64,000 nt of DNA from Scyliorhinus canicula (lineage: Eukaryota). Made by a program: the position numbers and the translations under genes. Below, in pieces: positions 5,700-39,718 of the stretch. The notes beneath the pieces were generated by a model. It was given only the letters and a program-made list of their open reading frames with translations, ran no database searches and was not told the DNA's origin. Each line of letters opens with the position of its first letter. Position 1 is the stretch's first letter. The stretch covers positions 492,363 to 556,362 of the forward strand of contig NW_024055478.1 in NCBI RefSeq assembly GCF_902713615.1, written 5' to 3'.

Positions 5700-5906
5700 A
5701 AAAATCCCAGAGGACTATAGGCTGCTCTCGCCATTGACAGAGAGAGAGCTGACTGGAGCTGATTTAAGCTGAGGGTCAGCACATCTCAGGCGAGAGGCCT
5801 GGCTGAGAAGGCCGGGCCTTCATGAATAAACTCAGCCAATACAGGAGTTGAATCCTCACTGTTGGCCCCGAACCAGCCGTCCAGCCAACTGAGCTAACCG
5901 ACCCCT
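5700..5906 (-). mobile_element. tRNA-derived SINE (same family as 23562-23756)
   Basis: Minus-strand head GGGGTCGGTTAGCTCAGTTGGCTGGACGGCTGG. Confidence 0.8.
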
Positions 5907-18970: not shown

Positions 18971-19362
18971 TCATTGACATGAATTAACGGTATCCATCAG
19001 AGCGAGGGAAATGTTCACAAAACTGGGTTTACCGCTGGATTTATCAACCGTTCTGTTGATGATCTTCAAGGGGATGGCTTCATGTCCCACCACACAGGAG
19101 TAAGAAGCGCCGCTGGCCCACTCCTTCGCTGCAATGGATAACAGGCTGTACATGAAGAAGGAGCTATTGCCGTTCTCCGCCATCACCTCGGTGTTCTTGT
19201 AGTTCCCGGGATTCACCGGCTTGTCATTGACGGTCCACTTGACGAAGATCTCTCGGGGGGAGAAACCTCTCACTAAGCAGCTGAGGGAGACGAATCTCTG
19301 AGCGGAGACGTCTTCAGCCGAGGGCAGGAGGACAGAGACAGACGGTTCCCGTGGATTGGGAT
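18971..19362 (-). CDS. IGHM: IgM CH4 plus secretory tailpiece ([19 protein letters not shown]...[24 protein letters not shown]); internal donor after 19033 for the membrane form
   Basis: ctgcag acceptor; tailpiece has the N-glycan site NIS and penultimate Cys; G|GTAAA internal donor at the DKSS-G boundary. Confidence 0.97.
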
Positions 19363-19669
19363 CTGCAGAAAATGTACAATAAATGTCAATAAAATGGGGA
19401 ATTCCGGAGACAATGGAACCGCGGGTTAGATATGAGAGAAATGTGTTTTGTGTTGGATTTTAAAGGTTTCCATTTTCCACTTTGGGATCTGTCCGGTTTC
19501 CCAGCTCGGAGCAGAGGTGGACACAACCTTTTCCCTGAGAATTTACGGATATTGGATTCGAAAGTTTCAGAAAGTGTACAGCAAGGAAACAGGCCATTCG
19601 GCCCAACTGTTCTGCGCTGGTGTATAAACTCCACACCAGGCTCCTCCCACCTTACTCCCAGAGGATTGG

Positions 19670-20935
19670 AAAACTGCCTTATTCAAAAGGGGAGGGAGTC
19701 AAAATCAGGTAACTATTAGGCCAGCGACCTTAACATCTGTCCGTGGAAAACGGTTCGAGTCCATTATAACAGATCCAATAGCTGAGCATTTCGAAATACA
19801 TAACATAATCAAACAGAGTCAGCACGGCTTCATGAAGGGTAACTCATGCCTGAAAACTTTATTGCCCTTATTCGAGGTGATAACGCGAAGGCTAGAGAGG
19901 GGGAGGGGTGGGGGGCAATAGATGTAATATACATGAATTTCAAAACTGTGTTTAATAAATGAATGTACTATTCCCATGTTTACAGATGGCAAAAATAGGT
20001 AGAAAGGCAAGTGGCGAGGATTACAGAAAATCCACAGAGGGACAGAGAATGTGAGGTTACACACTTTGGGAGGAGGAAGAACATAGCGGAATATTATTTA
20101 GCTGGAGAAAGACTGGAGAAAGCTGAAGTAACGGGGGAATTGGGGGTCCTCGTGCAGAAACCACAAAAAGCAAATTCTGCAGGTAATATGGAGACAAATT
20201 GAATGTTGACATTTATTTCAAAGGGAATAGAATATAAACATGGGGCAGTCTGGCTAAAACTATACAAGGCATTCCCGTACCGGACTCCACGAACAGGCGC
20301 CGCAATGTGGCGACTAGGGGCTTTTCACAGTAACTTCATTGAAGCCTACTTGCGACAGTAAGCGATTATTATTATTTAGTTAGACTACACCTGATACACT
20401 TTGAATAGTTTTGTTGCCCTTATCTGAGGAAGACAGATTGGTTTTGAAGGCAGTCCAGAGAAGGATCATGAGGTTGATCCCGAGTATGGAGGCATTTTCT
20501 TATGAGCTGAGGGTAACTTTGCTGGTTTGTACTTCTTGGAGTTCAGAGGAATAAAGCGACCTAATTGAGACAAGATTCTCGGGGAGTTTCTTTGTATAGA
20601 CGCTGAGAGGTTGTTTACCCCTGTGGGAGCGTCTCGGAGCAGTGCAGGATCACAAAGTGAGGGTTCGCCCATTTCAGACAGAGATGAGCAGGAATTTCCT
20701 CTCTCAGAGGGTAGTGAAGCTGTGGAGTTATTTAACGCAGGGGGGCTGTAGATTCTGGGTCGGCGAGTACGTTCAAGGTTGAGGGAGACATATTCTAAAT
20801 CAGTCAAGGCGTCAAGGGATATGGGGATAAGGCTGGAAAGAGGAGTTGAAGATAATCACAGCAGATCAGTCATGACCTCACTGAAGGCTGGACCAGTGTT
20901 GATGGGCCCAATGGGTTACATCTGCGCCTAAGTCC
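19670..20935 (+). mobile_element. Fragmented CR1 ORF2 and tail in the CH3-CH4 intron, with a SINE fragment at ~20280-20380
   Basis: NYRP.TLTS, QHGF.KG.SC, CEVTHFGR motifs, degenerate. Confidence 0.75.
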
Positions 20936-21164
20936 TGTGGACTATGGTCTCGCTCCATCTAAACTCAACATCGCTGTTTTCAATTCATTGTTCATTCGTC
21001 TGCATATCAATTTCCCCCTTAAACTCTAAGGGCCCAGAGTATTTAGTTAGTGGAATTACCAATCAGAATGGACCATAAATACACTGAATGCTAAATACTG
21101 ACCGCTGCACTGACACTAGAAATAGACACAATGACTGACTTATTGCTTCAGTCTCACCGCTCAC

Positions 21165-21473
21165 CTATTTTTTTGTGGATTGAAATTCTTAAAGGAGTTG
21201 GCAGGTCCTGATGGCTCGCCACACAGTTAAACACAGCCCCACTCAGCCACGCTTGTGTCGAGATGTTTAATTTGCTGAGCACGCTCTCAATATCTGCCCC
21301 AGGCTCGTCTGCAATCTCTGATTTCAGCGGCTTCTTCGCTTCACTCCAGGACACGTTGACTCCATAAGGACCATTCGAAATGACGCAGGTTAAGGTTACA
21401 GTCGCCTCCAGTAAGACCTGTTCTATTGGCGGTGGCAGTATTGTTACTGAGGCAACAGTGCAAGCGTAAGGAT
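21165..21473 (-). CDS. IGHM: IgM CH3 exon ([25 protein letters not shown]...SIHKKI)
   Basis: 309 nt; ttcacag acceptor, GTGAG donor; [20 protein letters not shown]. Confidence 0.96.
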
Positions 21474-21649
21474 CTGTGAATGAAAACATGAAAATTAACC
21501 CACGTTTCATCTTCAGAATCAGGACAGCAGGATTCAGCCTTCACTCTCTAATTGGGAATAAAGCAACTTCAAAATATCAACCCCGACAGACCGCCTTTAA
21601 TCTTCGATATACAATAGAAAACCAGCGTGTTCTGTGAAAACTATTAAGG

Positions 21650-21970
21650 AATCATAGATCACTACAGTGCAGAAGAGGACCATTCGGCCCATGGAGTCTG
21701 CACCGACCCGCGAAAGAGCACTCTACCTAGGACAATTCCCCCACCCTATCCCTGTAGCCTCACAACCCCACCTAATCATTGGACGTTCAGCGTTAATTTA
21801 GCATGACCAATTCACCTAACCTGCACATATTTGCCTGCGGGAGGAAACCAAAGCACCTGGAGGAACCCCGTGCAGAGACGGGGAGAAGGTGTAAACTCCA
21901 CACAGTCACCCGCCGTCAGTATTGAACCGGGTCCCAGGCACGGTGAGGCCTCAGTGCTAACCACTATTGT
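21650..21970 (-). mobile_element. HE1-like SINE in the CH2-CH3 intron
   Basis: Tail, core and head as in other copies. Confidence 0.75.
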
Positions 21971-22418
21971 GAAAATCGTTTAGCCCCGGTATCATTTTAA
22001 TGAATCAGTATTGCAGCATTCCCAATGCGATTTATAATTCCTGATCTCTGGAGCGCAGTCATGAATGCTCATTTATAAATAGGTTGGATGAACTTTCCAA
22101 CACTTTCACCCGAAACAATAAAGGTTTCATGCCACCCACTGCCTCTGAAATATGATCAGCTGTTTCGGAATAAAGCTAATATCAATTCCACCTCACTCAC
22201 TAAATGATTTCAAAGTAGTGGAAACATTCTTTGCTGTTCTGGTAATATCCTGAATGGTGAGCAACCCTAATGCAGCCCTTACATCAGAATGAAACACAAA
22301 CTACATGGCAGTAAATTAGAAGTTATTATGTGCTTTGTACAAACTTCAGTACATTCCTGATTTGGATTAACATCAGAATGCAGGATAATTTATTGTTTCC
22401 TCTGTTTAGATCTCTTAC

Positions 22419-22727
22419 CAGACGCGGTGATGTTGTGATTTTGGGTGACCTCTTGATGAGTGACCTGGCAGGTAAAGACCGCTTTGCTGAACCATTCCCC
22501 AGCGGAGACTGTCAGCCGACTGCTCGCCGAGAAGTTCCCGTTCACTTCACAGGCGGGAGAGGTGACAATTCCTGAACTCATGGGTTGTCCATTCTTCAGC
22601 CACTTCACCGTGATTGAATTTGGCTGGAAATCGTTAATTGAACAGACGATGGTTGCAAATTTCTGTCTTGTGATTTCTTCACTGGAACTCACGGTGAGGA
22701 GAACATTTGGAGCATAAATTCTGGGAC
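22419..22727 (-). CDS. IGHM: IgM CH2 exon ([19 protein letters not shown]...NHNITAS)
   Basis: 309 nt; ttgaag acceptor, GTAAG donor; IVC, VKWLKNG, FTCQVTH. Confidence 0.96.
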
Positions 22728-22936
22728 CTTCAAGAAACACAATTAGATATTTCGTGCAGAAGAAATTGATAAACAAAATGAGTTCATATACTTAAAAAAA
22801 TGTTTGTGGTCAATAGACACTAAGCTGGATTTTCCAGGGATCAGGAATTTGCCGAGTATTACAAATGAGTTCTATCCAAGACCCTATACAAGGTCATCAT
22901 AGGTTTTCTATTTCTCACAGGTTCCACAACACTTAC

Positions 22937-23236
22937 ATTCCATTCCAATGCTCTTGTCTGAGACGCTGTGTTGAACCTCACAGTTGATTTTGCTGCATTC
23001 CCCCTCTGACTCGGTGATGGTTAACTGGCTGCTCAGGGTGTAGGTTCCCTTCTTGGTTTTTACTGATGGGTATTTCTTAACTCCAGTGGTGATCAGCTGC
23101 CCATCTTTCTTCCAGGTAAGGCTGGTGATTTCTGGGGAGTAGTCCATCGCCAAACAGCCGAAGGTCACGGAGCCGTGGGTGTTGTGTTGCTGACAGGAGG
23201 AGACCAGGCTGTAGAGAGTGGGCGGAGTCGGTGTCA
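22937..23236 (-). CDS. IGHM: IgM CH1 exon ([18 protein letters not shown]...DKSIGME)
   Basis: 300 nt; cccccag acceptor, GTAAGT donor; C1-set Ig domain (FGCL, LTWKK, YTLSSQL, NCEV). Confidence 0.96.
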
Positions 23237-23561
23237 CTGGGGGAGAATGGCCCATTCAACAAGTTAGACTCTGGTATTTGTAATTTATAAGTAACCAAGC
23301 ATTTCATAATTTGACTAGAACTATGATTTTATCCTAACATTTACCGATTAAATCCCACATCCACATTGAATCTTCTGTCAGTTCTATCGTTCGGAATCAC
23401 TACTTTTTGTCCCTTCTTCAGAAACTCACCTCTTTCTCCGTCTCCATCCAAAAAAGCACATTTTGATGTAATCTGAATGGTGTAACTTTCATTGAATTGA
23501 AAGAGAGGAGCAGAGAGTTTTCTCCATTATTTCAGCCACCATGTAATATAAAATGCAAATG

Positions 23562-23756
23562 AGGCCATAGTCCCGGAGACTGTTCTTTCCCTTTGAGAAC
23601 TGACTGTGGTGATTTAACTTGAGGGTCACCACACATCAAGCGAGGGGCAAGGTTGAGAATGGGGGTCTTCATGAATAACCTCAGCCGGTGCAGCAATTGA
23701 ATCCGTGCTGTTGGGATCGCTCTTCGTCATGAACCAGCCGTCCAGCTAACTGAGCT
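23562..23756 (-). mobile_element. tRNA-derived SINE whose 5' end runs into the 29-bp array
   Basis: Alignable by eye with the copy at 5700-5906; minus strand starts AGCTCAGTTAGCTGGACGGCTGG (A-box-like) with a GGATTCAATT B-box-like motif. Confidence 0.8.
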
Positions 23757-25590
23757 GTGTACGTCACAATCCAGCTAACTGAGCTGTCTACGTCACAATC
23801 CAGCTAACTGAGCTGTGTACGTCACAATCGAGCTAACTGAGCTGTGTCCGTCACAATCCAGCTAACTGAGCTATGTCCGTCACAATCCAGCTAACTGAGC
23901 TGTGTACGTCACAATCCAGCTAACTGAGCTGTGTACGTCACAATCCAACTAACTGAGCTGTGTACGTCACAATCCAGCTAACAGCTGTGTACGTCACAGA
24001 CCAGCTAACTGAGCTATGTACGTCACAATCCAGCTAACTGAGCTGTGTACGTCACAATCCAGCTAACTGAGCTGTGTCCGTCACAATCCAGCTAACAGCT
24101 GTGTACGTCACAATCCAGCCAACTGAACTGTGTACGTCACAATCCAGCTAACAGCTGTGTACGTCACAGACCAGCTAACTGAGCTGTGTACGTCACAATC
24201 CAGCTAACTGAGCTGTGTACGTCACAATCCAGCAAACAGCTGTGTACGTCACAATCCAGCTAACTGAGCTGTGTACGTCACAATCCAGCTAACTGAGCTG
24301 TGTACGTCACAATCCAGCTAACTGAGCTGTGTACGTCACAATCCAGCTAACTGAGCTGTGTACGTCACAATCCAACTAACTGAGCTGTGTACGTCACAAT
24401 CCAGCTAACTGAGCTGTGTACGTCACAAACCAGCTAACTGAGCTGGGTACGTCACAATCCAGCTAACTGAGCTATGTACGTCACAAACCAGCTAACTGAG
24501 CTATGTACGTCACAATCCAGCTAACTGAGCTGTGTACGTCACAATCCATGTAACTGAGCTATGTACGTCATAAACCAGCTGACTGAGCTGTGTACGTCAC
24601 AATCCAGCTCACTGAGCTGGGTACGTCAGAATCCAGCTAACTGAGCTGTGTACATCACAATCCAACTAACTGAGCCGTGTACGTCACAATCCAGCTAACT
24701 GAGCTGTGTACGTCACAATCCAGCTAACTGAGCTGTGTACGTCACAATCCAGCTAACTGAGCTGTGTACGTCACAATCCAGCTAACTGAGCTGTGTACGT
24801 CACAATCCAGCTAACTGAGCTGTGTACGTCACAATCCAGCTAACTGAGCTTTGTACGTCATAATCCAGCTAACTGAGCTGTGTACGTCACAATCCAGCTC
24901 ATTGAGCTGTGTACGTCACAATCCAGCTAACTGAGCTGTGTACATTACAATCCAACTAACTGAGCCGTGTACGTCACAATCCAGCTAACTGAGCTGTGTA
25001 CGTCACAATCCAGCTAACTGAGCTGTGTACGTCACAATCCAGCTAACTGAGCTGTGTACGTCACAATCCAGCTAACTGAGCTGTGTACGTCACAATCCAT
25101 GTAACTGAGCTATGTACGTCATAAACCAGCTGACTGAGCTGTGTACGTCACAATCCAGCTCACTGAGCTGGGTACGTCAGAATCCAGCTAACTGAGCTGT
25201 GTACATCACAATCCAACTAACTGAGCCGTGTACGTCACAATCCAGCTAACTGAGCTGTGTACGTCACAATCCAGCTAACTGAGCTGTGTACGTCACAATC
25301 CAGCTAACTGAGCTGTGTACGTCACAATCCAGCTAACTGAGCTGTGTACGTCACAATCCAGCTAACTGAGCTGTGTACGTCACAATCCAGCTAACTGAGC
25401 TTTGTACGTCATAATCCAGCTAACTGAGCTGTGTACGTCACAATCCAGCTCATTGAGCTGTGTACGTCACAATCCAGCTAACTGAGCTGTGTACATTACA
25501 ATCCAACTAACTGAGCCGTGTACGTCACAATCCAGCTAACTGAGCTGTGTACGTCACAATCCAGCTAACTGAGCTGTGTACGTCACAATC
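23741..25590. repeat. 29-bp tandem array (gtcacaatccagctaactgagctgtgtac), ~64 units, AGCT-rich
   Basis: Directly visible near-perfect tandem units, with a few 26-bp deletion variants. Confidence 0.98.
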
Positions 25591-25974
25591 AATTTGTCTT
25601 ACAAAGGATGTCTCTTCATTTGTATCATTGCAGTTTTGGGAAATTCCCTTTGTACAAACTGACTGATGCCCCCTCCTCTCTCCACCTCACTACCCCCACT
25701 CCCCAAACCAGAGAATAGTTGCTTTGCTTCAAAAACACCTTCCGAATGCACCTTTATATAATTACAATAAAACTCTACATTTGAGTAATTGCAACATTCT
25801 CTAATTTTAGGATCATGCACATTAACAGTGGGAGGCGACCATTCGGTCCGTCCAGCTTCCTCCCCATTCAGTAAGATCCTGGTTGTGCTGATCGTGGTGT
25901 TAACCCTACATTCTGCCTGCCACTGAGACCGGGCTGTCTGCAACCCCCCCCCCCCCCCCCCCACCCCGCCCCGC

Positions 25975-27790
25975 GCTCTCTGAGCGTTCCCCCATCTCTC
26001 TGCCGTCCCCGCTGGATTTCTGTACCTTCCTCCTGGTCCCTTCACTATTGTTTAGCTCTCTACTCTTTTCCACGGCTCTCTGCGCTTTCCTCCGCATCTC
26101 TGCACTTTGGGCTCTGAATTTTCTTCCTGCTCGTTGTGCTTTGCCCATGTCCGCTGCACATTCCCCAGTTCTTTGGGCTTTTCCCGGTTCCTGGCACTTT
26201 CCGCGGGCTTTTTGAACATTTCGCCAGGACTGTGAGCTTTACCCCGATTCTTATGGCTTATCGCCCACTCTATGGACTTTCGTCCGGCTCTATGCACTTG
26301 CGCCAGCTCTCTGTACCTTTCCCCGGTTCTCTGCTCCTTCCCCTGGCTCTCTGCCCCTTCCCCCGGTCCCCGGCTCTCTGCACTTTCCCCCGGCTCTCTG
26401 CGCCTTCCCCCGGCTCTCTGCGCCTTCCTCAGGCTCTCTGCACTCCGCCGGCTCTCTGCTCCTTCCCCCGGCTCTCTGCTCCTTCCCACGCCTCTCTGCA
26501 CTCTCCCCCCGGCTCTCTGCGCCTTCCCCCGGCTCTCTGCACCGTCCCCGGCTCTCTGCTCCTTCCCCCGGCTCTCTATGCCTCCCCCCGGCTCTCTGCA
26601 CTGTCCCCGGCTCTCTGCGCCTTCCCCTGGCTCCCTGCTCCTTTCTCCGGCTCTCCGCTCCTTCCCCCCGGCTCTCTGCTCCTCCCCCCGGCTCTCTACA
26701 CTTTTCTCCTGCTCTCTGCACTTTCCTCCGGCTCTCTGCTCCTTCCCCGGCGCTCTGCTCCTTCCCCCGGCTCTCTGCTCCTTCCTCCGGCTCTCTGCTC
26801 CTTCCCCCGGCTCTCTACACTTTCCTCCGGCTCTCTACACTTTCCTCCGGCTCTCTGCACTTTCCTCCGGCTCTCTGCTCCTTCCCCGGCGCTCTGCTCC
26901 TTCCCCCGGCTCTCTGCCCCTTCCCCGGCTCTCTGCTCCTTCCCCGGCTCTCTGCACCTTCCCTCAGCTCTCTGCTCCTTCCCCCGGCTCTCTGCTGCTT
27001 CCCCGGCTCTCTGCGCCTTGCCCCGGCCCCCTGCACTCGCACCCCCACCCCTCGCACCCCTCCCCCTCCCTGCACTTCCCCTGGCTCCTTGCACTCCCAC
27101 TACCCGTCCCCCGCCTTTCCCTTGCTCTCTCCACTTCCTTCCTTCCTCTGTCCTTTTCTACGGCTCTCTGCCCATTCCCCTGCATCTCTGCCCATTCCCC
27201 TGCATCTCTGCCATTTCACCTGCATCTCTGCCCATTCCCCTGCATCTCTGCCCTGTCCCCTGCATCTCTGCCCATTCCCCTGCATCTCTGTGCTTTCCTC
27301 CCAACTCTGCCTTTTCGCCGCCTCTTTGCTCTCATCCCCCGGCTCTCTGCTCCTTCCCCCGGCTCTCGGCACCTTCCCCCGGCTCTCTGCTCCTTCCCCC
27401 GGCTCTCGGCGCTTTCCCCCGGCTCTCCGCACTTTTCTCCGGCTCTCTACTCCTCCCCTCGGCTCTCGGCGCCTTCCCTCGGCTCTCGGCTCCTTCCCCC
27501 GACTCTCGGCTCATTCCTCCGTCTCTCTGCGCCTTCCCCCGGCGCTCGGCTCCTTCCCCCGGCTCTCCGCACTTTCCTCCGGCTCTCTGCTCCTCCCCCC
27601 GGCTCTCTGCCCCTTCCCCCGGCTCTCTCCTCCTCCGCTCGGCTCTCGGCGCCTTCCCCCGACTCTCTGCTCCTTCCCCCGACTCTCGGCTCATTCATCC
27701 GTCTCTCTGCGCCTTCCCCCGGCTCTCGGCTCCTTCCCCTGGCTCTCGGCTCCTTCCTCCGGCTCCTTCCCCCGGCTCTCGCCACTCCCG
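25975..27790. repeat. 19-20 bp tandem array (ggctctctgctccttcccc[c]); G/A-rich on the IgM sense strand
   Basis: Visible tandem repeat; accounts for all ORFs in 26052-27903. Confidence 0.95.
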
Positions 27791-27889
27791 TGTTATGCAG
27801 ACACATTCGGGCGCCACTGGACATCAGTTTCGCTCCAGTTCTCTATTCCTCTCGCTGCAGACGCTCCCTTGCCGATTTCCTGAGCATCA

Positions 27890-30780
27890 GTGAGAGAGGA
27901 TGAGTGAGTAACTGAGTGAGGGTAGGAGAGTGAGTGTGTGTGAGTGAGTTGGCTGATTGAGGATGTCTGAGTGTTGATGAGTGGCAGATCAGGGTGAATG
28001 ACTGAGTGAGGGTAAATGTGTGAGGGTATGTCACCGAGCACGAATGAGCCAGGATGGGTGAGGGAGAGTGAGTGAGACGCAGGGAATGAGTGCCGCTGGG
28101 TGAGTGAGGTTGTGTAGTGAGAGTCAATGAAGGTGAGTGAACGAGGTTGGGTGAATGAGGGTCGGTGAGTGAGGATGATTGAGTGAGGATGCATGAGTGA
28201 GTGCGGGTCAGTGAGGATGTAACTGTTGCTCAGTGAGTGAGGTGCGTTATTGAGAATTAGTGGGTGTGCGAGGGTGAGTGAGGTAGTGTGAGTGGCAGAG
28301 AATGAGTGTGGGTGGTGCGCGAGGGTGGGTGTGTGATGGTGGTTGAGTGAGTCAGGGTGAGTGAGGGGATGGGTGTGGGTAAATGAGGGTGTGTGAGGAT
28401 GGGTGGGTGAGTGAGGGTGAGTGATAGTGGGTGACAGGTTGGGTGCGTCTGGTGAGGATGGCTCAATAAGGGTGTATGAGGGAATGTGAATGAGTGAGGG
28501 TGCGTAAGTGAGGAAGGGTAAGGATCTGTGAGTGAAGGTGTGTGAAAGAGGATGGGTGCGAGTGTGAGGGTGAATGAGTGAGGCTGGGTGAGTGAGTATG
28601 AATGAGTCATTGTAGATGTGTGAGGGAAGATTCGAGAGCGATGGTGGGTTGGAGGGTGAGTGAGTGAGTGTGGGCGAGTTAGGGTGGGTGGTGGTATTTG
28701 ATTGAGGGGGGAGTGAATGTGTCGGTGAGGGTGGGTTACTGATTGAGGGTGTGTGGGTGTGTGAGTGTGGGTGAGTGATTCAGTGAGCGTGAGGGTGGGG
28801 AGTGAGTGAGGGTGGGTGGGTGAGGGTGTGTGAGAGTGGGTGAATGACGGTGTGTGAGGGTGGGTGAGTGACGGTGTGTGAGTCAGGGTGTGTGAGGGTG
28901 GCGGAGTAAGTGTGGGTGGGTGACTGAGTGAGGGTGAGAGCCTGAATGAGAGTGGGTGAGAATGAGTGACGATGGGCGTTAGTTTGAGGATGAGTGGGTG
29001 AGAGTGTGTGAGTGAGGGTGAACGAGTTAGGTTGGGCTTGAAAGGGTGAGTCAATCAGGCCGAGTGTTGCTGAATGAGGCTGGGTGAGTGTGTGTGTGAG
29101 GGTGAGTGAGTGTGTCAGGGAGGGTGGGTGAGTGAGAGTGTGTCAGGGAGGGTGGGTGAGTGAGTGTGTGTCAGGGAGGGTGGGTGAATGAGTGTCTGAC
29201 AGGGAGGGTGGGGGTGAGTGCGTGTCAGGGAGGGTGGGTGAGTGAGTGTGTGTCAGGGAGGGTGGGTGAGTGAGAGTGTGTCAGGGAGGGTGGGTGAGTG
29301 AGTGTGTGTTAGCGAGGGTGAGTGAGTGTGTGTCAGGGAGGGTGGGTGAATGAGTGTCTGTCAGGGAGGGTGGGTGAGTGTGTGTCAGGGAGGGTGGATG
29401 AGTGAGTGTGTGTCAGGGAAGGTGGGTGAGTGAGTGTGTGTCAGGGAGGGTGGGTGAGTGAGAGTGTGTCAGGGAGGGTGGGTGAGTGAGAGTGTGTCAG
29501 GGAGGGTGAGTGAGTGTGAGTCTGTCAGGGAAGGTGGGTGAGTAAGGCTGTGTCAGGGAGGGTGGGTGAGAGTGTGTGTGTCAGGGCGGGGGTGGGTATG
29601 TGAGAATGTGTCACGGGGGTGAGAGTGTGTCAGGGAGGGTGAGTCAGTGAGTCTGTGTCAGGGAATGTGGGTCAGTGAGTGTGTCAGGGAGGGTGTGTGA
29701 GTGAGGGTGTGTCACCGAGGGTGGGTGAGTGAGAGTGAGTCAGGGAGTGTGGGTGAGTGAGTGTGTGTCAGGGAGGGTGGGTGAGTGAGTGTGTAACAGA
29801 GAGAGTGGGTGAGTGAGAGTGTGTCAGGGAGTGTGGGTGAGTGAGAGTGTGGCAGGAAGGGTGGGTGAGTGTGTGTGTGTCAGGGAGGGTGGGGGAGTGA
29901 GGGGGAGGATGGGGGAGTGAGATTGTGTCAGGGAGGGTGGTTGAGTGTGTGTGTGTCAGGGAGGGTGGGTGAGTGAGGGGGAGGATGGGGGAGTGAGAGT
30001 GTGTCAGGGAGGGTGTGTGAGTGAGGGGGAGGATGGGGGAGTGAGAGTGTGTCAGGGAGAGTGGGTGAGTGAGGGTGTCAGGGAGTGTGGGTGAGTGAAA
30101 TTGTATCAGGGAGGGTGGGTGAGAGTGTGTGTGTCGTGGAGGATGGGTGAGTGAGAGTGTGTCACGGAGGGTGGGTGAGTGTGTGTGTGTCAGGGAGGGT
30201 AGGTGAGAGAGTGTGTGTCAGGCAGGGTGGGTGAGAGAGTGTGTCAGGGAGGGTGGGTGAGAGAGTGTGTGTCAGGGAGGGTGGGTGAGTGAGAGTCTGT
30301 CAGGGAGGGTGGGTGAGTGAGTGTGTGTCAGGGAGGATGGGTGAGTGTGTGTGTGTCAGGGAGGGTGGGTGAGTGAGAGTGTGTCACGGAGGGTGGGTGA
30401 GTGTGTGTGTGTGAGGGAGGGTAGGTGAGAGAGTGTGTGTCAGGTAGGGTGGGTGAGAGAGTGTGTCAGGGAGGGTGGGTGAGAGAGTGTGTGTCAGGGA
30501 GGGTGGGTGTGTGAGAGTCTGTCAGGGAGGGTGGGTGAGTGAGTTTGTGTCAGGGAGGGTGGGTGAGTGATGGTGGGTGAGTGAGAATGTGTCAGGGAGA
30601 GTGAGTGAGTGAGGGTCAGTGAGTGACCGTGTGTGTGAGGGTGTATGTGAGGGTGGTTGAGGAAAGGTTTGCCATTGAGGATGGGTGAGTGAGGGTCAAT
30701 GAGTGATGGTGAGTGAGTGAGGGTAAGTGAATGATTGAAGACAGGTGAGAGTGAGTGAGTGAGTGAGCGTGGGTGAGTGA
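27890..30780. repeat. G/T-rich repeat region, core ~26-28 bp unit gtgtgtcagggagggtgggtgagtga (~29090-30560)
   Basis: Visible tandem and degenerate repeats. Confidence 0.93.
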
Positions 30781-31159
30781 CCATTCCCAGATGCTCCCAG
30801 CCCATCAGGACGATATTTCTCTGGATGATTTTCTGCTCAGGCTCAGCTTCCTGTTGCCTGTTGTCCACAGCCGAGCTGGGGGCTCCTCCATTCGGCTCCA
30901 CCACCCCCACCTCCTCCATCTCTCTCCATCCATCCTGTCCTGATTCTCCACATTGATCAGCTTTCAGTAACACCGGCTTTGTAAAGTCAGACAGCAGTGT
31001 AGATCACTGGGCAGCTGCTTTAATGCCGATGTAATTTCATTTTCCACAAAAAAATTTAGGACTGGGACAATGATCATTCCTGCAACTTAATGGATTTTCA
31101 TTTTGCAAATGGGATTTTTCTGTCATATTGTATCACGGACAGTGTTGTTGTGTTTATTC

Positions 31160-32085
31160 ATTCTTGTGATGTAGACGTCTCTGGCTGGGCCAGCATTTAT
31201 TTTCCATCCCTCATTGCCTTTGAGAAGGTGGTGAGCTTCCTTCTTTAACCATTGCAGTCCATGTGGTGTTTCCCCAAGTCAGTTACATACATGGTTTTGA
31301 ACCAGCGGCACTGAAGGAACGGTGACATACTTTATAGTCATGATGCTGAGTGACTTGGAGTTCAGCTTCCAGTTGGTGATGTTCCGATGTGTCTGCTGTC
31401 CTTGTCCAGATGGCCGCTGTCATGGGTTTGGAAGGTGCTGCCTAAGGAGACATGATGAGTTTCTGCAGCGGATCTTTAGATGGTGGACAGGCTTTGGGGA
31501 GTCAGGAGATTAGTTTTTCACCGCAGGATTACTCACCTTTGATCTGTTCTTCTGGCCTCAAAATGTATATGACTCGTCCAGATCACTTTCTGGTCCATGT
31601 GAACCCCCAGGAGGTTTCGAGTGGGGATTCAATGATGGTAATGCCATTGAATGTCAAGGGGCAGTGGTTAGACCGTTCTTACTGGAGGTGGGCTTTGCCT
31701 TCGATTGGGTGACTTGACTGTTACTTACCACTTGTCAGCCAGAACCTGATGTAGTCTCCATGTTGCTTTATTTACACGTAGATTTATTCAGTGACTGCAC
31801 AGTTGCAAATTGTGCTGAGCTTGGTGCAATCATCTGAGAACAACCCAGTTCAGACATTATGGTGAAAAGGTCATTGATGAATAAACTGAAGATGGTTTGT
31901 CCGAGGACACTGCCCTGAAGAAGTCTCGCAGTGATGTCCTGGAATTGAGATGATTAACCTCCAGCAATGGAATCCATCTACCTTGGTGCTGGTTATGACT
32001 CCAACCAGCGGAGATTGTTCTCCTGATTCCCATCCATTCATTCTTTGGTTGGGCTCCCCGATGCCACACGTTTAAATGATGCCGT
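31160..32085 (-). mobile_element. Degenerate CR1/L2-superfamily LINE 3' fragment
   Basis: Reverse-complement similarity to 43050-43850. Confidence 0.6.
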
Positions 32086-32091
32086 GATTTG

Positions 32092-32405
32092 GCGGCCCTG
32101 TAGCACAGTGGTTAGCACTGTCGCTTCACAACACCAGGGATCCGGGTTCGATTCCCACTAGGGACATTGCCTGTGTGGAGTCTGCAGGTTCTCCCCGTGT
32201 CTACGTGGAATTCCTCCGGGTGCTCCGGTTTCCTCCCACAAGTCCTGAAAAACATCCTGGTAGATGGATTGGAGATTCTGAATTCTTCCCCGGTGTACCC
32301 GAACAGGCGCCAGAGTGTGGCATGTCGGGGATTTTCACAGTACCTTCATTGCAGTGTTAATGTGAGCCCACTTGTGACAATAATAAAGATTATTTTGTTT
32401 ATTAT
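32092..32405 (+). mobile_element. SINE (same family as 9897)
   Basis: tRNA head gtggttagcactg...gggttcgattccc and shared tail. Confidence 0.85.
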
Positions 32406-32439
32406 TGATGCTAGATTCAGTCGCTCTCATCTGTGTATC

Positions 32440-34210
32440 TGAAAGTGTGTGCGTGTCTGAGTGTGTGTGAGAGAGAGGGAGAGTGTGGGTATGGGTCTGA
32501 GAACATGTGTTTGTGTCTATGTATGTGGCTGCATGCATGCGAGAGATGGATCAAGAGAGAGGGAGAGAGAGTATATGTGTGAGTGTGTGTATGTGTGAGA
32601 GTATCTCTGTGTGTCAGAGAATATCTGTGTGTGAGAGCGCCATTGTGTGTATTTGTGCGAGCGAGAGGATGTGTGTGTGTGAGGGAGCAAAATAGTGTCC
32701 ACAGGAGAGAGACTGTATGCGCAAAACTGTGTTTGAGATAGCATGTGTGCCAGACATCATGTGTGTGAGAGCGTGTGTGTGAGTGTGTGACAGAGCATAT
32801 GTGTGAGAGCATGTGTGCAAGAGAGGATATGTGTGAGAGAGCATGTGTGAGAGAGCATGTGTGTGAGAGAAAGTGTGCACGAGACAGCATGTGTGCAAGA
32901 GAACATGTGTGAGAGAGCATGTGTGCGAGAGTGCATGAGTACCAGAGAGCATGTGTGTGAGAGAGTGTGTGTGCAAGGGAGAATGAGAGAGCATGGGTGT
33001 GTGAGAGAGTGAGTGAATGAGAGAGCATGTGAGTGAGAGGGCATGTGTGTGAGGGACCGTGTGTGCAAGAGAGCGTGAGTGTGAGAGATAAGTGTGTGAG
33101 AGAGCGTGTGTGTGAGAACACACGTGTGGGAGAGTACATGTGTGTGAGAGAGCATGTACGCAACAGAGCATGTGTGTGAGAAAGCATGTGCGTGAGAGAG
33201 CATGTGTGTCAGCGAACATGAGTGTGAGTGAGTGAGTGAGAGAGTGTGTGCGAGAGTGTGAGTATCAGAGCTCATGTGCATAAGAGAGCATGTATGAAAG
33301 AGAGGATATATGTGTGAGAGAGCAAGAGTACAAGAGAGCGTGTGTGTGTGAGAGGCCGTGTGTTTGAGAGAGTGTGTGTGTGAGAGAGCGTGTGTGTGAG
33401 AACACACGTGTGGGAGAGTACATGTGTGTGAGAGAGCATGTACGCAACAGAGCATGTGTGTGAGAAAGCATGTGCGTGAGAGAGCATGTGTGTCAGCGAA
33501 CATGAGTGTGAGTGAGTGAGTGAGGGAGTGTGTGCAAGAGTGTGAGTATCAGAGCTCAGGTGCATAAGAGAGCATGTATGAAAGAGAGGATATATGTGTG
33601 AGAGAGCAGGAGTACAAGAGAGCATGTCTGTGCGAGAGGCCGTGTGTTTGAGAGAGTGTGTGTGTGAGAGAGCGTGTGTGTGAGCGTGAGAGAGTGTGCG
33701 TGCGAGAGACCATGCATGTCAGGGCGAGTGTGAGAGAGAGGGCGTATGCGTGAGAGAGTGTATGTGTGAGAGAGCGAATGTGTGAGAGAGCCTGTATGTG
33801 AGAGAGCATTTTGTGTGTGAGAGATGTGTCTGACAGAGCATGTGTGTGAACGAGCGTGTGTGCAAGAGATAATGTGTGCGAGAGTGCATGTGTGTGTATG
33901 TGTGTCTGCGAATGATTTTTAATGTGACTGAGATTGGTAAAGCGTGTAAGAGAGTGTGTGTGAGAGAGTGTGAGAGGGAGATTGCCTGTGAAAGAGAGAG
34001 AGGGATAATGTGCCTGTGCATGTGAGAGAGTGAGTGACAGTCTGTGTGAGGGAGAGTTGGACAGAGATAAAGTTGGTGACAGAGAGTATGTAAGAGACTG
34101 AGTGTGTGAGGCAGTGCGTGTGTGTGACTGTGTGTGTGTGAGAGAGAGACTGTGTGTTTGAGGAATAGTCCGGGTTTGTGGGAGAGAGGGAGTGTGTGAG
34201 GGAGAAACAG
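32440..34210. repeat. (GA/GT)-rich simple-sequence region with an internal 284-bp duplication
   Basis: aacacacgtgtgggagagtac occurs at 33117 and 33401. Confidence 0.9.
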
Positions 34211-34404
34211 TGTGACGATGAGAGATTATTTAGTCTGTCAAATTTCATTCTGAAACACGGGGGAATGAATCATGCAAACTGCTCGATTCTAATTGATAAA
34301 TGGTCAACTTACGACAATAACAAATCAATAACCTCTCTGAAATTAATTTCAAAACTCCCTTCGCCTTTCAGCTATTTCTCCTGTCTGTCTGAACTGGGCA
34401 CAAT

Positions 34405-35240
34405 GTATTATCACTGAGACAAATGTGAGGTTATCCATTTTGGTAGGAATAACAGCAAACGGGACTATTATTTAAACGATAAAATACTAAAGCATGCCGC
34501 TGTGCAGAGAGACTTGGGTGTGTTAGTGCATGAGTCACAGAAGGTTGGTTTACAGGTGCAACAGGTGATTAAGAAGGCAAATGGAATTTTGTCCTTCATT
34601 GATAGAGGGATGGAGTTTAAGACTAGGGAGGTTATGTTGCAATTGTATAAGGTGTTAGTGAGGCCACACCTGGAGTACTGTGTTCAGTTTTGGTCTCCTT
34701 ACTTGAGAAAGGACGTACTGGCACTGGAGGGTGTGCAGAGGAGATTCACTAGGTTAATCCCAGAGCTGAAGGGGTTGGATTATGAGGAGAGGTTGAGTAG
34801 ACTGGGACTGTACTCGTTGGAATTTAGAAGGATGAGGGGGGATCTTATAGAAACATTTAAAATTATGAAGGGAATAGATAGGATAGATGCGGGCAGGTTG
34901 TTTCCACTGGCGGGTGAAAGCAAAACTAGGGGACATAGCCTCAAAATAAGGGGAAGTAGATTTAGGACTCAGTTTAGGAGGAACTTATTCACCCAAAGAG
35001 TTGTGAATCTATGGAATTCCTTGCCCAGTGAAGCAGTTGAGGCTCCTTCATTACATGTTTTAAGGTAAAGATAGATAGTTTTTTGAAGAATAAAGGGATT
35101 AAGGGTTATGTTGTTCGGGCCGGAAAGTGGAGCTGAGTCCACAAAAGATCAGCCATGATCTCATTGAATGGCGGAGCAGGCTCGAGGGGCCAGATGGCCT
35201 ACTCCTGCTCCTAGTTCTTATGTTCTTATGTTCTTATGTT
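34405..35240 (+). mobile_element. Young 5'-truncated CR1 insertion with (tcttatgt)n tail in the J-C intron
   Basis: 188-aa ORF 34502-35068 (LYKVLVRPHLEYCVQFWSP...RGDLIE) followed by 3' UTR and tandem tail. Confidence 0.92.
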
Positions 35241-38042
35241 CACATTGAATATAACAGATTGACGGGTGTTTAATGTCCGTGACAGAGATCCAGTGTTTGC
35301 CAAGAAATAAACAAACCAGGAAACATTCACATTGGAAACTGATGACCTGATTTGATGCAATTTTCTAATTAAATATAATCAATAAAGCAATCGAGGCGGG
35401 CCACCTCTTCAACCTGAGTAAATAAATGTATTGTTTTCTAAATTATTTTCAGTACAATTAAACATTCTCCAATAGCTTTGATATCGCACGCCAGTGTATT
35501 ACTCTTGTAGGAGTTAATTTATGTTGAATTAGTTAGTACTAATGTCGCATTGCAAGTTATTGCCAATTGTCAATTAGTTGTCCTGTCTGCTGATTTGTAC
35601 TCTATAACATAAATAATAAAAAATGGTTCTCTGTAATTCAAAACCTGTTGCTGCCTGAAATCTGCTAAATAATTTGGAGTTAATTAAATATTAAACTTCA
35701 AATTATCGGATGGAATAATTCAGACATGTGTAATATATCATCTGTTTCTTAAAGCGGTGCTCTCGAATTGATAAACTGTTGTTACTCGAAACTATATATC
35801 TAACAATAAAGTCCTTGTTAGTTTGTGATCAATAAAAGTGTTTCCGAGATTTAATCATTCAGGCAATTCGATTAACTTTATTCTTGAAAATATTGCTTAA
35901 AGAAAAATAGCATGACCGGAAAAGTTTATAGGCTGGGAATATTTTGTGATTATTTATGAAGCTGTTTTAATAATAACATACTGATTCTACAGCACTGTTC
36001 AGTTGCTCAAGACATATTTTAATTCTTTATTTCTCTGATTACGTTTTCAGTTACTTAAGTAGGAGTTTTATATTGCAGTTTGGCAATTTATGTATCCGGT
36101 TATTATATTAGTTATGTGCAGCAGCTCGTATATTATCTCTTCAGCGTCAGTTGTCGTTGTCTCTATTTTAATCATAAGGAGTTTCTCAGAGGTGGAAGTC
36201 GCTGAAAGTGAAGGAATTGTTCTTATGATTTTATCTAAATTGTAGAAATGTTCGTACTGCTCATTGCTGGAGACAGTAAAAGCTCGAAATTCAAAGAGAT
36301 TAATTTAATTACAAAAGGAGAATATTAGCTGTGCAAAAAATAATAACATCCTGTCTCGCAGAGCTGTGCTGTACACAATATAACAATAAAACAAATTATA
36401 CAATAGAAGAATGGATTATATCTGAGCCTCAAGCTTATTTCTTATTAAATCATAAATTGAACAAGAACATTTCTCCATCATTTTCTCATTATGTTTCAGT
36501 GATATAGAGGATCTGACTCAGTAGTTTTCATTAAGTGTTGCACTGATTAATGGTTTGCAGAGCACAGCAGAATGGTGGAAGGCGATTGATGATTAATGAC
36601 ATTAATATGATAACATATTTGGATAATATGGTTATAACATAGCATTATAATTATTTAAGTTATATTAATTTTACTCACTAATTTGAAAACGTTTTAATTA
36701 AATAGTTTCAGATTGCAGTAACGAATTGCGTTCTTAATGACGCCATGGTTTTGTTTAATCAGTTATCACCATGTTAAATTTAAAAATGTCTATCAAATCT
36801 TTAATTCCTTTCTTTATTTTCGAAACCTGCTGCGTTTACTCCCTACAATTGTATTTCAAGGAGATTAAAACACGCAAACCTTTTTACATTTAACCAGAAA
36901 ACGTGTAACTGCTCAATGTCACCCAGTTTGAACAATGCAGAAACTACAGAGAAACAGAAAACCGCTTCACAAATTGTACTTATTCAAAGTCACCCGGACA
37001 CAGTATCTCCTCAGCAGGAAAACCCCCAAATCATCGTAAGGGCTGAACCCGTTTCATTGAGAAACAGCTCAATTCTACATTCAACAGAATCAAACGTTAC
37101 ATTTCAAAAACATCTGAATATCGAATCTAGCAAACCAGTTCGCCACCAAATGTATGAATTATCAAACTAAATAGAAATACAAAACAACAGTAATATCACT
37201 GTGAGTATGTGGGGTATGTCCAAAATATTTTTGAAACTTTACCACATTTTATTCATATTGGACCATATTTCAAACGCATTTAAACAGTTGGAAGGAGAGA
37301 TAAAGCTGCATCCATCAATCCCACCAAGGTGGGACACTGAAGAAAAGCCAGGCTGTGATTGCAGTAACAAATTATGTTTGGAAAGAGCATTTTAAACTGT
37401 GGCTTAGTTTAATCTGCAACCATCACTTTTAAAAAGCACTCTAAAATCCTGACTGTATTCTGCCTAAAATCGTGCAGCAGTTTCAAACACGTGTATTGTT
37501 TTCATTCAATTACAAAACATGGAACCGCTCAGTATCAACGAGTATAAAGAACATAGAAACGCCAGAACCGTTTCATAAACTTTACTTATTCAAAATCACC
37601 CAGACAGAATCTCCTGAGCAGAAAAACACCAAATTACATCACCGAGGGGCTGAAATTCGTCTCATGGAGAACCAGCTCAAATCTACAATTCAACAGAATC
37701 AAACAGCATTTCAAGAAAATCTCAGTCTAGAACCCACGAAATCCGCCTTTCAGCAAGTGAATGAACAATTAAAACACACAGAAATATGGAAGAATATCAT
37801 CAGCATTGTCAATAAGCCTGAAGTGTTCAATAAATTGACATTGATGCTTCAGCATATTTTGTGAATATTGGGTCGATTTCTAACACTTGTACAGGAGGTG
37901 GTAAAACCTGCAGCCACCAGATGTCACTGAGATTAAACATTGCAGAAATACCAAACTGTTTACAGGCGTTAGGTATTTAAAGTACCCAGCCACACAGTAT
38001 CACTCAAGTAAAACAGTTCATAAATAATGGAATGGTTCTTAC

Positions 38043-38090
38043 CTGCAGTCACCGTCACTATGGTGCCTTGTCCCCAGTCGTCCATGGCGG
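38043..38090 (-). CDS. IGHJ: JH segment AMDDWGQGTIVTVTA
   Basis: WGQG motif, 48 nt, GTAAG donor at 38042, phase 1 compatible with CH1. Confidence 0.96.
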
Positions 38091-38484: not shown

Positions 38485-38507
38485 CCAGGTATATCCCCTG
38501 CTGTAGT
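38485..38507 (-). CDS. IGHD: DH diversity segment ACTACAGCAGGGGATATACCTGG (23 nt; all three frames open: TTAGDIP / LQQGIYL / YSRGYTW)
   Basis: Flanked on both sides by 12-spacer RSSs. Confidence 0.93.
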
Positions 38508-39149: not shown

Positions 39150-39454
39150 GCCTCTTGCACAGTAATAGATGGCGGTGTCTTCGGTCTTCAGGTTCGTCAT
39201 GGCCAAAGAGAAGATGTTGTTTGAAGTGTCTTTGGACGCAGTGAATCGATCTTTAATTGCTGGGGCGTAGTTGTTGTTAGATGAACTATAGTGGTAAAGC
39301 AGCCACTCCAGCCCCTGTCCGGGAACCTGGCGGACCCAGTACATGTCGTAGCTGCCAAGATTGAAGCCGCTGGTTTTACAGGTCAGTGTCAGGGAGCCTC
39401 CGGGACGCCCGGTCTCTGCCTCTGGCTGAGTCAACACAACATCCGACTGGACAC
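39150..39454 (-). CDS. IGHV: VH exon: [101 protein letters not shown]
   Basis: ttacag acceptor at 39455; open frame with canonical Cys, WVRQ, and YYCAR; followed directly by an RSS. Confidence 0.97.
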
Positions 39455-39582
39455 CTGTAAAAATATATCAAAAAGCCCGAGGATTAATGCTGGTGAAATG
39501 ATTGGTGACTCTGGAACATTCCAGAGAGAGACTAACACTGAGACAGTAACAGTGAGAGACTTGGACAATAAAAACTACTCAC

Positions 39583-39628
39583 GGGATAAGAAAGTCAGCA
39601 ACAAACTGAGAGAAATGGCCCACCTCAT
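39583..39628 (-). CDS. IGHV: VH leader exon MRWAISLSLLLTFLS(R); an in-frame upstream ATG at 39640 would add MTRR
   Basis: 46-nt exon ending at a GTGAGT donor (39582-39577); 128-bp intron; phase 1 joins to GT-GTC-CAG-TCG giving RVQS. Confidence 0.93.
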
Positions 39629-39718
39629 CCTTCTGGTCATTTGGGGGAAATGGTTGTGTCAGGAACTCAGTGAACAAACCAGCTCCCGGACTGTTGGATT
39701 CGGGTCCCAGTGAGCGGC

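What the first reader, a model, noticed from the sequence alone, without database searches (positions are those of the whole stretch)
23741..25590. Switch-region-like AGCT array ~500 bp 5' of shark C-mu1
Seen: ~64 tandem 29-bp units, each with two AGCT palindromes (ccAGCT and GAGCT) plus AACT, i.e. about one AGCT per 15 bp and roughly 110-120 in total (estimated, not counted exactly), ending ~500 bp before the CH1 acceptor. Established: AGCT is the overlapping WRC/WGCW AID hotspot, GAGCT is the mammalian S-mu pentamer, and the AT-rich, AGCT-dense Xenopus S-mu can support switching. Switch-like recombination between IgH clusters has been reported in nurse shark, without canonical S regions as far as I recall. 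Inference: this array has the position and motif density of a functional S region and could be an AID break hotspot for inter-cluster switching.
Basis: partly seen in the sequence, partly recalled or inferred. Interest (0 to 1): 0.8.

Follow-up and report, generated by a model that had tools for sequence, protein, structure and literature searches.

The report
SINE-born AGCT repeat before shark Cmu1
A shark IgM antibody gene has, 504 bases before its first constant exon, a real 1.85-kb repeat packed with the DNA motif that the antibody-mutating enzyme AID prefers; the repeat grew from the head of a jumping element, and nothing yet shows that B cells use it for class switching.

Summary
Window 23741-25590 holds 64 tandem units (60 of 29 bp, 4 of 27 bp) with 113 AGCT, or 61 per kb against 3 per kb elsewhere. 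The IgM gene is on the minus strand, and the array ends 504 bp upstream of the Cmu1 acceptor inside a 14.8-kb J-C intron.

The array runs without a break into the body of a high-copy tRNA-type SINE. Seventeen of the 29 bases are the SINE's A-box head, so much of the AGCT density is inherited. The array is young and unstable: its last 495 bp are a perfect copy of the preceding block. AGCT positions vary as much as other positions.

A bamboo shark IgM gene with a 15.4-kb J-C intron has no such array. A related species carries the unit at high abundance. First-reader notes of this scan report the same array, 0.2-0.6 kb long, at the same place in about ten other IgM clusters of this genome; I did not check them.

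By motif density and position it matches a frog-type, non-G-rich switch region. It has no G clusters and no promoter was shown nearby. It lies 14-16 kb from the V promoter. Use in switching is untested.

The parts
23741..25590 (-). AGCT-dense tandem array: 64 units (60 x 29 bp, 4 x 27 bp) with 113 AGCT. The coding-strand unit is TTGTGACGTACA + CAGCTCAGTTAGCTGGA.
   Evidence: TRF; motif counts; unit list
24545..25590 (-). Higher-order duplication. 25096-25590 is a perfect copy (0 mismatches in 495) of 24545-25039, a 19-unit, 551-bp period. Inside it a 10-unit (290-bp) sub-repeat has 9 mismatches in 261.
23545..23757 (-). Body and head of a tRNA-type SINE, in the same orientation as the Ig gene. 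The array's last unit runs straight into it. The 3' limit is approximate.
   Evidence: Alignment to the SINE copy at 5640-5960; blastn; read depth at 23580-23730 is hundreds of times the neighbouring spacer in two species
23237..23740 (-). 504-bp spacer between the array and the Cmu1 acceptor: SINE body plus about 300 bp of unique intron.
23485..23525 (-). About 40-bp intron element roughly 250 bp upstream of Cmu1. It is shared with bamboo shark: 89% over 38 bp by blastn, about 35 of 40 by my count on the alignment.
   Evidence: blastn; alignment
22911..23236 (-). Cmu1 exon (C1-set domain). The acceptor is at 23237/23236. The 3' donor was not mapped exactly; 22911 is the end of the open frame.
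18974..22791 (-). Cmu2 (in 22393-22791), Cmu3 (in 21157-21540) and Cmu4 with the secretory tail (in 18974-19459).
23237..38042 (-). J-Cmu intron, 14,806 bp, holding four tandem arrays.
38043..38090 (-). JH segment (WGQGTIVTVTA), with a heptamer and a 22-bp-spacer RSS upstream and a GT donor at 38042.
38485..38507 (-). Single D segment flanked by 12-spacer RSS on both sides.
39150..39640 (-). Leader exon (39640-39583), leader intron and VH exon (39454-39150), followed by a 23-spacer RSS. A TATA-like box lies near 39727.
26284..27765 (-). Neighbouring 20-bp array, 693 bp upstream of the AGCT array in the direction of transcription. Its coding strand is 51.7% G with 47 GGG runs per kb and 30 WGCW per kb.

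Best explanation
The array is a lineage-specific minisatellite. It grew by tandem amplification of a 29-bp piece at the 5' end of a tRNA-type SINE that sits about 0.25-0.5 kb upstream of Cmu1 in a catshark-like IgM cluster.

Seventeen bases of each unit are the SINE's Pol III A-box head. This head carries one AGCT natively. The second AGCT arose either from a G-to-A change in that head or from a second native AGCT brought closer by an 8-bp deletion. The other 12 bases are most simply the 5' flank of the insertion.

In this cluster the array then expanded to 64 units by unequal exchange or slippage in blocks of 10 and 19 units. Part of the AGCT density (at least one of the two per unit) is therefore inherited from the SINE and multiplied by amplification. 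I see no evidence that AID targeting selected for it.

Because the array lies in the transcribed J-C intron, it offers AID-expressing B cells a ready-made substrate like the frog S-mu: non-G-rich and AGCT-dense. Whether it is actually hit or used for switching is not shown.

Shown here: the anatomy, the SINE contiguity and homology, the perfect duplication, the multi-copy status and the absence from one bamboo shark gene. Inferred: the order of events and the lack of selection.
For: - The last unit continues without a gap into a SINE body. Another SINE copy in the window (5640-5960) aligns base for base across TAGCTCAGTTGGCTGGACGGCTGGTTC.
- A head model built from read consensus and that copy matches 23695-23756 at 81%. 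It also matches two loci that ARAGORN calls tRNA-like, 15659-15740 and 55624-55712.
- Word depth at 23580-23730 is 15,000-67,000 in a DNA run of the same species, against 40-100 in the adjacent spacer. In a second species it is 34,000-158,000.
- 29 of 64 units are identical to the consensus and there are 23 unit types.
- 25096-25590 equals 24545-25039 with 0 mismatches in 495.
- Variants per position are 2.0 in the eight AGCT positions and 2.0 in the other 21.
- The bamboo shark IgM locus L001 has a 15.4-kb J-C intron with 3.4 AGCT per kb, at most 8 in any 1 kb, and no array. It has a different SINE family at the comparable place, next to the shared ~40-bp element.
- Scan notes report 0.2-0.6-kb versions of the same array 430-520 bp upstream of Cmu1 in about ten other clusters. 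I did not check these.
Against: - A SINE origin does not exclude later co-option.
- By the scan notes the array is kept at the same place in many clusters. Its unit is abundant in a second species.
- It lies next to a G-rich array with mammalian S-like composition.
- The test for constraint on AGCT positions has little power: 58 variant sites, many of them copied by block duplication.
- Only one bamboo shark cluster was compared. It has a germline-joined VDJ and comes from a short-read assembly, which could collapse repeats.
- The origin of the 12 non-A-box bases is not settled. They match 9 of 12 bases of a downstream stretch of the SINE head.
Confidence: 0.7

Rival explanations
1. The array is a working proto-switch region. 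Transcription of the J-C intron in activated B cells exposes the AGCT-dense array to AID. Closely spaced deaminations on both strands become double-strand breaks, and these breaks are joined to breaks in the intron of another IgM or IgW cluster. The SINE origin is simply how the element was acquired, and the array is now kept because it raises the switching rate.
For: - The position is right and the density is 61 AGCT per kb over 1.85 kb.
- Frog S-mu is not G-rich, forms no R-loop, and still gives about a quarter of S-gamma1 activity in mice through its AGCT-rich part (PMC2442634).
- Synthetic repeats with 50 AGCT per kb support switching (PMC4245955).
- RNA-like runs that carry spliced Cmu1-Cmu2 also have low-depth contigs running from Cmu1 through the spacer into the first units. 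The array edge is therefore transcribed at least as pre-mRNA.
- A G-rich array (51.7% G, 47 GGG runs per kb) lies 693 bp upstream.
- Scan notes report the same array at the same place in other clusters.
Against: - No junction or mutation data exist.
- The array is 14-16 kb from the V promoter. In mammals, as I recall, AID action falls off within about 2 kb of a promoter, and no I-exon-like promoter or spliced sterile transcript was seen.
- Coding-strand G is 27.7% with no GGG run. In mouse cells, lowering G from 46% to 29% cuts switching (PMC4245955).
- AGCT positions show no extra constraint.
- Array length ranges from about 7 to 64 units among clusters by the notes.
- The array is absent from a bamboo shark IgM gene. 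Bamboo shark belongs to the same order as the nurse shark, in which switching was reported.
- Reviews describe that switching as SHM-linked and without S regions (PMC4279169, PMC4588147).
Confidence: 0.2
2. The array has another cis function in the IgM gene. It could be a repeated transcription-factor platform acting as an intronic enhancer or silencer: each unit holds a CRE-like TGACGT, a Myb-like TAACTG, and CAGCTG in the 27-bp variants. It could also be a run of Pol III A boxes that recruits TFIIIC and acts as a boundary.
For: - The motifs are visible in every unit.
- A canonical octamer ATGCAAAT lies in the spacer at 23553-23560.
- The spacer holds a ~40-bp element shared with bamboo shark.
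Against: - The motif matches are short and were not tested.
- Octamers are not enriched: 4 found against 2.9 expected.
- The array varies in length and is absent from bamboo shark.
- The conserved element lies outside the array.
Confidence: 0.05
3. The array is real but its length here is partly an assembly artefact. The perfect 495-bp duplicate could be a mis-assembled or collapsed-then-expanded repeat, so the true allele would be shorter or longer.
For: Zero mismatches in 495 bp. Short-read contigs cannot span the array.
Against: - The rest of the array carries an ordered pattern of distinct variants, which is typical of real higher-order repeats.
- Contigs of an independent run show in-phase extra copies, going back 116 bp, which is 4 units.
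Confidence: 0.05

Closest known systems
Xenopus S-mu (AT-rich, AGCT-dense switch region)
   Same: Both are tandemly repetitive and lie in the intron before Cmu. [quoted passage not shown] Frog S-mu shows that such a sequence can support switching (PMC2442634).
   Different: - The frog locus is a translocon with downstream isotypes and germline promoters; this is a single-isotype cluster with no promoter shown near the array.
- This array is built from a SINE head and is very homogeneous and young.
- No junctions are known for this array.
- I could not fetch the frog sequence, so no density comparison was run.
Mouse S-mu, (GAGCT)nGGGGT repeats
   Same: Both lie between J and Cmu1, are tandem repeats, and contain GAGCT/AGCT. 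The length is of the same order: 1.85 kb here against about 3 kb in mouse (PMC2193334).
   Different: - By its consensus, mouse S-mu has roughly 150 AGCT per kb and G clusters on the coding strand.
- Here there are 61 per kb, 27.7% G and no GGG run, and the GAGCT reads on the template strand.
- G-richness in this intron belongs to a separate 20-bp array 693 bp upstream.
Minisatellites derived from SINE or other transposable-element sequence
   Same: - The array is contiguous with the parent element.
- The unit is homologous to part of that element.
- It shows block duplications.
- Length differs among paralogues (by the scan's unchecked notes) and unit abundance differs between two species.

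   Different: Its place in an antibody gene intron and its AID-hotspot content give it a plausible side effect that ordinary minisatellites lack. That TE-derived minisatellites are common is my own knowledge; I did not look it up here.
Nurse shark inter-cluster 'switching' (Zhu et al. 2012, known to me only through reviews)
   Same: It is the only described process in sharks that would use breaks in the J-C intron. Reviews link it to AID and to hypermutation (PMC4279169, PMC8201067).
   Different: Reviews state that shark loci have no S regions or cryptic promoters (PMC4279169, PMC4588147). The primary paper is not held, so I could not check where its junctions fall or what its introns contain.

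Membership tests
Immunoglobulin switch (S) region | Lies in the intron between the rearranged VDJ and the first constant exon | tested here: met
   The array is at 23741-25590 inside the J-Cmu intron 23237-38042, 504 bp from the Cmu1 acceptor.
Immunoglobulin switch (S) region | Tandemly repetitive over about 1 kb or more | tested here: met
   64 units, 1850 bp, 92% matches.
Immunoglobulin switch (S) region | High density of AGCT / WGCW AID hotspots | tested here: met
   61 AGCT per kb against 3.0 per kb background; z = 4.4-4.8 in 2.5-kb bins. The axolotl criterion is z > 4 (PMC9911811).
Immunoglobulin switch (S) region | G-rich coding strand with G clusters that form R-loops (mammalian type only) | tested here: not met
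   The coding strand is 27.7% G with GC skew +0.16 and no GGG run. The separate 20-bp array at 26284-27765 does have this composition.
Immunoglobulin switch (S) region | Own germline (I) promoter and spliced sterile transcript | tested here: inconclusive
   Only low-depth unspliced contigs run from Cmu1 into the spacer and the first units, at about 3-5% of exon depth. No splice into Cmu1 from within the laid stretch was seen. Contigs cannot show transcript starts.
Immunoglobulin switch (S) region | Somatic recombination junctions and AID-type mutations within it in B cells | not testable with these tools
   No B-cell genomic long-read data were available. The single read-laying run used contigs and covered only the array's edge.
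Immunoglobulin switch (S) region | Kept across paralogous genes and related species | tested here: inconclusive
   The unit is multi-copy in the source species and more abundant in a second species. Scan notes report it in about ten other clusters; I did not check them. It is absent from one bamboo shark IgM intron.
SINE-derived minisatellite | Array contiguous with the parent SINE in the same orientation | tested here: met
   The last unit runs into the SINE body at 23757 and below.
SINE-derived minisatellite | Repeat unit homologous to part of the SINE | tested here: met
   17 of the 29 bases align to the A-box head of another copy in the window and to the read-derived head model. The origin of the other 12 bases is unsettled.
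SINE-derived minisatellite | Parent element is a dispersed high-copy family | tested here: met
   Other copies lie at 5744-5895 and 10473-10559, with head matches at 15690-15731 and 55635-55703. Word depth is hundreds of times that of the flank in two species.
SINE-derived minisatellite | Signs of unequal exchange or slippage (higher-order blocks, identical units) | tested here: met
   A 551-bp block duplication with 0 mismatches in 495; 29 of 64 units identical.

The most novel reading that the evidence does not exclude
Catshark IgM clusters carry a two-part switch-like module just before Cmu1: a G-rich array followed by a SINE-born AGCT array. AID-expressing B cells use it as the preferred break zone for exchanging constant regions between clusters. 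Switch regions would then have arisen independently in a shark lineage by co-option of a transposable element, or at least be far older and more widespread than the 'first in amphibians' view.
Probability: 0.2. Interest if true: 0.8.

Novelty: new variant of a known kind. Interest (0 to 1): 0.45.

Why it matters
Reviews state that shark Ig loci have no switch regions or cryptic promoters, and that how inter-cluster switching is directed is unknown (PMC4279169, PMC4588147, PMC8201067). This cluster has, in exactly the right intron, a sequence that would be called S-mu by the criteria used in amphibian genomes.

If B cells break there, the array would show how a switch region can be born from a transposable element. 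It would also move the origin of targeted switching below the tetrapods.

If they do not, it is a useful natural negative control. It would be a transcribed, AGCT-dense array that AID ignores, which bears on what besides motif density recruits AID: promoter distance, R-loops, pausing. Either outcome can be tested with catshark spleen DNA and with standard switch-replacement assays.

Tried and rejected
- ARAGORN and Rfam (E up to 1) find no tRNA or other RNA family in 22800-26300. The SINE head is too decayed to be called there, and its identity rests on alignment to other copies.
- The primary papers on shark switching (Zhu 2012; Zhang 2013; Hsu 2016) are not held. I could not check where the published junctions fall.
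- DNA of Mustelus asterias, Scyliorhinus torazame and a chromosome-level Chiloscyllium assembly could not be fetched because the files are too large. The only cross-species locus is one bamboo shark scaffold.
- I did not lay reads on the whole array, because read laying excludes long repeats. Only the proximal edge was laid. Depths there are summed contig word depths, not copy numbers.
- The plain lag-identity profile is blurred by the four 27-bp units. The block structure was read from the unit list instead.
- Each unit can form a hairpin, CAGCT-5 nt-AGCTG. It is weak: about -4 kcal/mol, with z from -1.6 to -2.6. I draw nothing from it.
- The sigma-70 promoter and terminator scan does not apply to a vertebrate gene.
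- Octamer motifs are not enriched.
- An alternative in which the whole unit derives from the SINE head with an 8-bp deletion is possible. It is less simple than 'flank plus head', because the last unit is collinear with the SINE without any gap.

Full report
**Observation**

TRF reports one array at 23741-25590 with period 29, 64.1 copies, 92% matches and no indels. Parsing gives 64 units: 60 of 29 bp and 4 of 27 bp. AGCT occurs 113 times, which is 61.1 per kb or one per 16.4 bp, against 3.0 per kb in the rest of the window. WGCW is 61.6 per kb against 16.7. In 2.5-kb bins the array bin stands at z = 4.4-4.8, or 24-36 with a robust spread. A random 29-mer of this base composition has two or more AGCT with P = 0.0044.

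**Context**

The Ig gene is on the minus strand. Pfam confirms a V-set exon and four C1-set exons. Cmu4 ends in an IgM-type secretory tail. The parts are:
- leader 39640-39583;
- VH 39454-39150 with a 23-spacer RSS;
- one D at 38507-38485 with 12-spacer RSS on both sides;
- JH 38090-38043, with the donor at 38042;
- Cmu1 starting at 23236.

The J-C intron is 14,806 bp. The array ends 504 bp before the Cmu1 acceptor and begins about 14 kb downstream of the V promoter region. In the direction of transcription the intron holds four arrays:
- a 16-bp array at 33896-32784;
- a 14-bp array at 30724-28303, with a coding strand of 53% C;
- a 20-bp array at 27765-26284, with a coding strand of 51.7% G and 47 GGG runs per kb;
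- after a 693-bp gap, the AGCT array.

In the gene's orientation the GAGCT pentamers are on the template strand.

**Origin**

On the coding strand the unit is TTGTGACGTACA followed by CAGCTCAGTTAGCTGGA. The last unit continues without a gap into about 210 bp that align to another element in the window (5640-5960, minus strand). That element's head reads TAGCTCAGTTGGCTGGACGGCTGGTTC. Partial copies of the same element lie at 5744-5895 and 10473-10559.

I built a head model from that copy and from the read consensus. It matches 23695-23756 at 81%. It also matches two loci that ARAGORN calls tRNA-like.

Laid contigs give word depths of 15,000-67,000 over 23580-23730, against 40-100 in the neighbouring spacer, in a DNA run of the same species. 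The figures are higher still in a second species.

The element is therefore a high-copy tRNA-type SINE, and 17 of the 29 bases of the unit are its A-box head. One AGCT is native to that head. The second corresponds to GGCT in the other copy (a G-to-A change). Under an alternative alignment it corresponds to a second native AGCT brought closer by an 8-bp deletion. The 12 remaining bases are most simply the 5' flank, because the array starts with them at its distal end.

**Age and dynamics**

Twenty-nine units are identical to the consensus, and there are 23 unit types. The distal 495 bp (25096-25590) are a perfect copy of 24545-25039, which gives a 19-unit block. Within it a 10-unit sub-repeat differs at 9 of 261 positions. 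This is the signature of recent unequal exchange. Variants per position are 2.0 both in the eight AGCT positions and in the other 21. There is thus no sign that AGCT is protected, although the test is weak.

**Distribution**

- Word depth over the first units is about a hundred times that of the unique spacer in the source species. It is over a thousand times in the second species. These are not copy numbers, but the unit is clearly multi-copy and shared by the two species.
- The second species also has the unique spacer, at about 90% identity.
- First-reader notes of this scan describe the same 29-bp array, 201-565 bp long, 430-520 bp upstream of Cmu1 in about ten other IgM clusters of this genome. 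One follow-up judged it to be young SINE-derived satellite. I did not see those sequences.
- The only other species whose DNA could be fetched is Chiloscyllium punctatum (L001). It has a germline-joined VDJ at 10146-10547 and Cmu1 at 25908-26258. Its 15.4-kb intron has 3.4 AGCT per kb, at most 8 in any 1 kb, and no tandem array of note.
- L001 shares a ~40-bp element about 250 bp upstream of Cmu1 with the window (23485-23525). It carries a different SINE family just upstream of that element.

The array is thus not an ancestral elasmobranch feature.

**Comparison with switch regions**

- Synthetic switch repeats that work in mouse CH12F3 cells carry 4 AGCT per 80 bp. They lose activity when coding-strand G falls from 46% to 29% (PMC4245955).
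- Frog S-mu is not G-rich and forms no R-loop. It gives about a quarter of S-gamma1 activity through its AGCT-rich part (PMC2442634).
- Mouse S-mu is (GAGCT)nGGGGT with n about 3 over about 3 kb (PMC2193334).
- Axolotl S regions were called by AGCT density z > 4 (PMC9911811).

This array meets the tests of position, repetitiveness and AGCT density. It resembles the frog type. It fails the mammalian G-richness test, with 27.7% G and no GGG run. The adjacent 20-bp array has the G composition but few AGCT.

**Transcription**

Two RNA-like runs carry spliced Cmu1-Cmu2 joints. They also have low-depth contigs that run from Cmu1 across the acceptor into the spacer, and from the SINE body into the first units, at about 3-5% of exon depth. 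This fits unspliced pre-mRNA. It does not show a separate sterile transcript, and the RNA label of those runs is a guess.

**Reading**

The best-supported account is a SINE-head minisatellite whose AGCT density is largely inherited and then multiplied by amplification (confidence 0.7). As a by-product it places an AID-friendly substrate in the one intron where a break could yield a productive exchange of constant regions.

That B cells really break there is possible (0.2). Several points weigh against it:
- the 14-16 kb distance from the only promoter seen;
- the lack of G clusters;
- the variable length among clusters;
- the absence from bamboo shark;
- reviews that describe shark switching as hypermutation-linked and without S regions (PMC4279169, PMC4588147, PMC8201067).

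A regulatory role (0.05) or an inflated assembly length (0.05) cannot be excluded.

**Novelty**

I found no paper that describes AGCT-dense or G-rich arrays before shark Cmu1, and reviews deny that they exist. The feature itself is a familiar kind of DNA, a TE-derived minisatellite, in an unusually suggestive place. The scan has flagged it repeatedly on other clusters of this genome.

Noticed in passing
window 26284-27765: A 20-bp tandem array (74 copies) lies 693 bp upstream of the AGCT array in the direction of transcription. Its coding strand is 51.7% G and 3.8% T, with GC skew +0.54, 47 GGG runs per kb and 30 WGCW per kb. This is the composition of a mammalian R-loop-forming switch repeat. 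The gap between the two arrays is 33.5% G.
   Followed up: partly
window 28303-30724: A 2.4-kb 14-bp array whose coding strand is 53% C (GC skew -0.84) and has almost no WGCW. It is the opposite polarity to the G-rich array next to it, so it would favour R-loops only for antisense transcription.
   Followed up: no
window 32784-33896 and 16679-18531: Two more arrays. One is a 16-bp unit in the J-proximal half of the intron. The other is a 52-bp unit (36 copies, 73% matches) just downstream of Cmu4. Both have background AGCT density.
   Followed up: no
window 23485-23525; L001 25615-25652: An intron element of about 40 bp lies roughly 250 bp upstream of Cmu1 in both the window and bamboo shark (89% over 38 bp by blastn; about 35 of 40 by my count on the alignment), although the surrounding intron no longer aligns. 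It could be a splicing or regulatory element.
   Followed up: partly
window 38485-38507: The cluster has a single D flanked by 12-spacer RSS on both sides, giving V-23 / 12-D-12 / 23-J. An orphan heptamer with a nonamer-like motif lies near 38397. This may reflect a germline D1-D2 join, as another first-reader note suggests.
   Followed up: partly
L001 10146-10547: The bamboo shark cluster used for comparison has a germline-joined VDJ, one open frame through YSCAMQWSGYFDYWGQGTMVTVTS. tblastn matches to Cmu2 and Cmu3 are split into two pieces each.
   Followed up: no
window 15575-15655: Three exact octamers (ATGCAAAT) lie within 80 bp, downstream of the Cmu exons and next to a SINE head that ARAGORN calls tRNA-Phe. 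Over the whole window the count is not above chance: 4 found against 2.9 expected.
   Followed up: partly
window 48258-50609: A LINE remnant on the + strand: an endonuclease domain and a reverse transcriptase split over two frames.
   Followed up: partly
window 6375-6917: A run of at least six C2H2 zinc fingers on the minus strand. It coincides with the 84-bp tandem repeat that TRF reports at 6416-6945.
   Followed up: partly
protein P0002: A 132-aa protein 83% identical to this shark Cmu1 is filed in public databases as a hypothetical protein of Salmonella enterica on a 480-bp contig. This is almost certainly contamination of that assembly.
   Followed up: no
window 22711-22941 (run X2): A run guessed to be DNA holds one contig with the Cmu1-Cmu2 intron skipped. 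The run may contain cDNA, or a processed IgM copy may exist in the genome.
   Followed up: no
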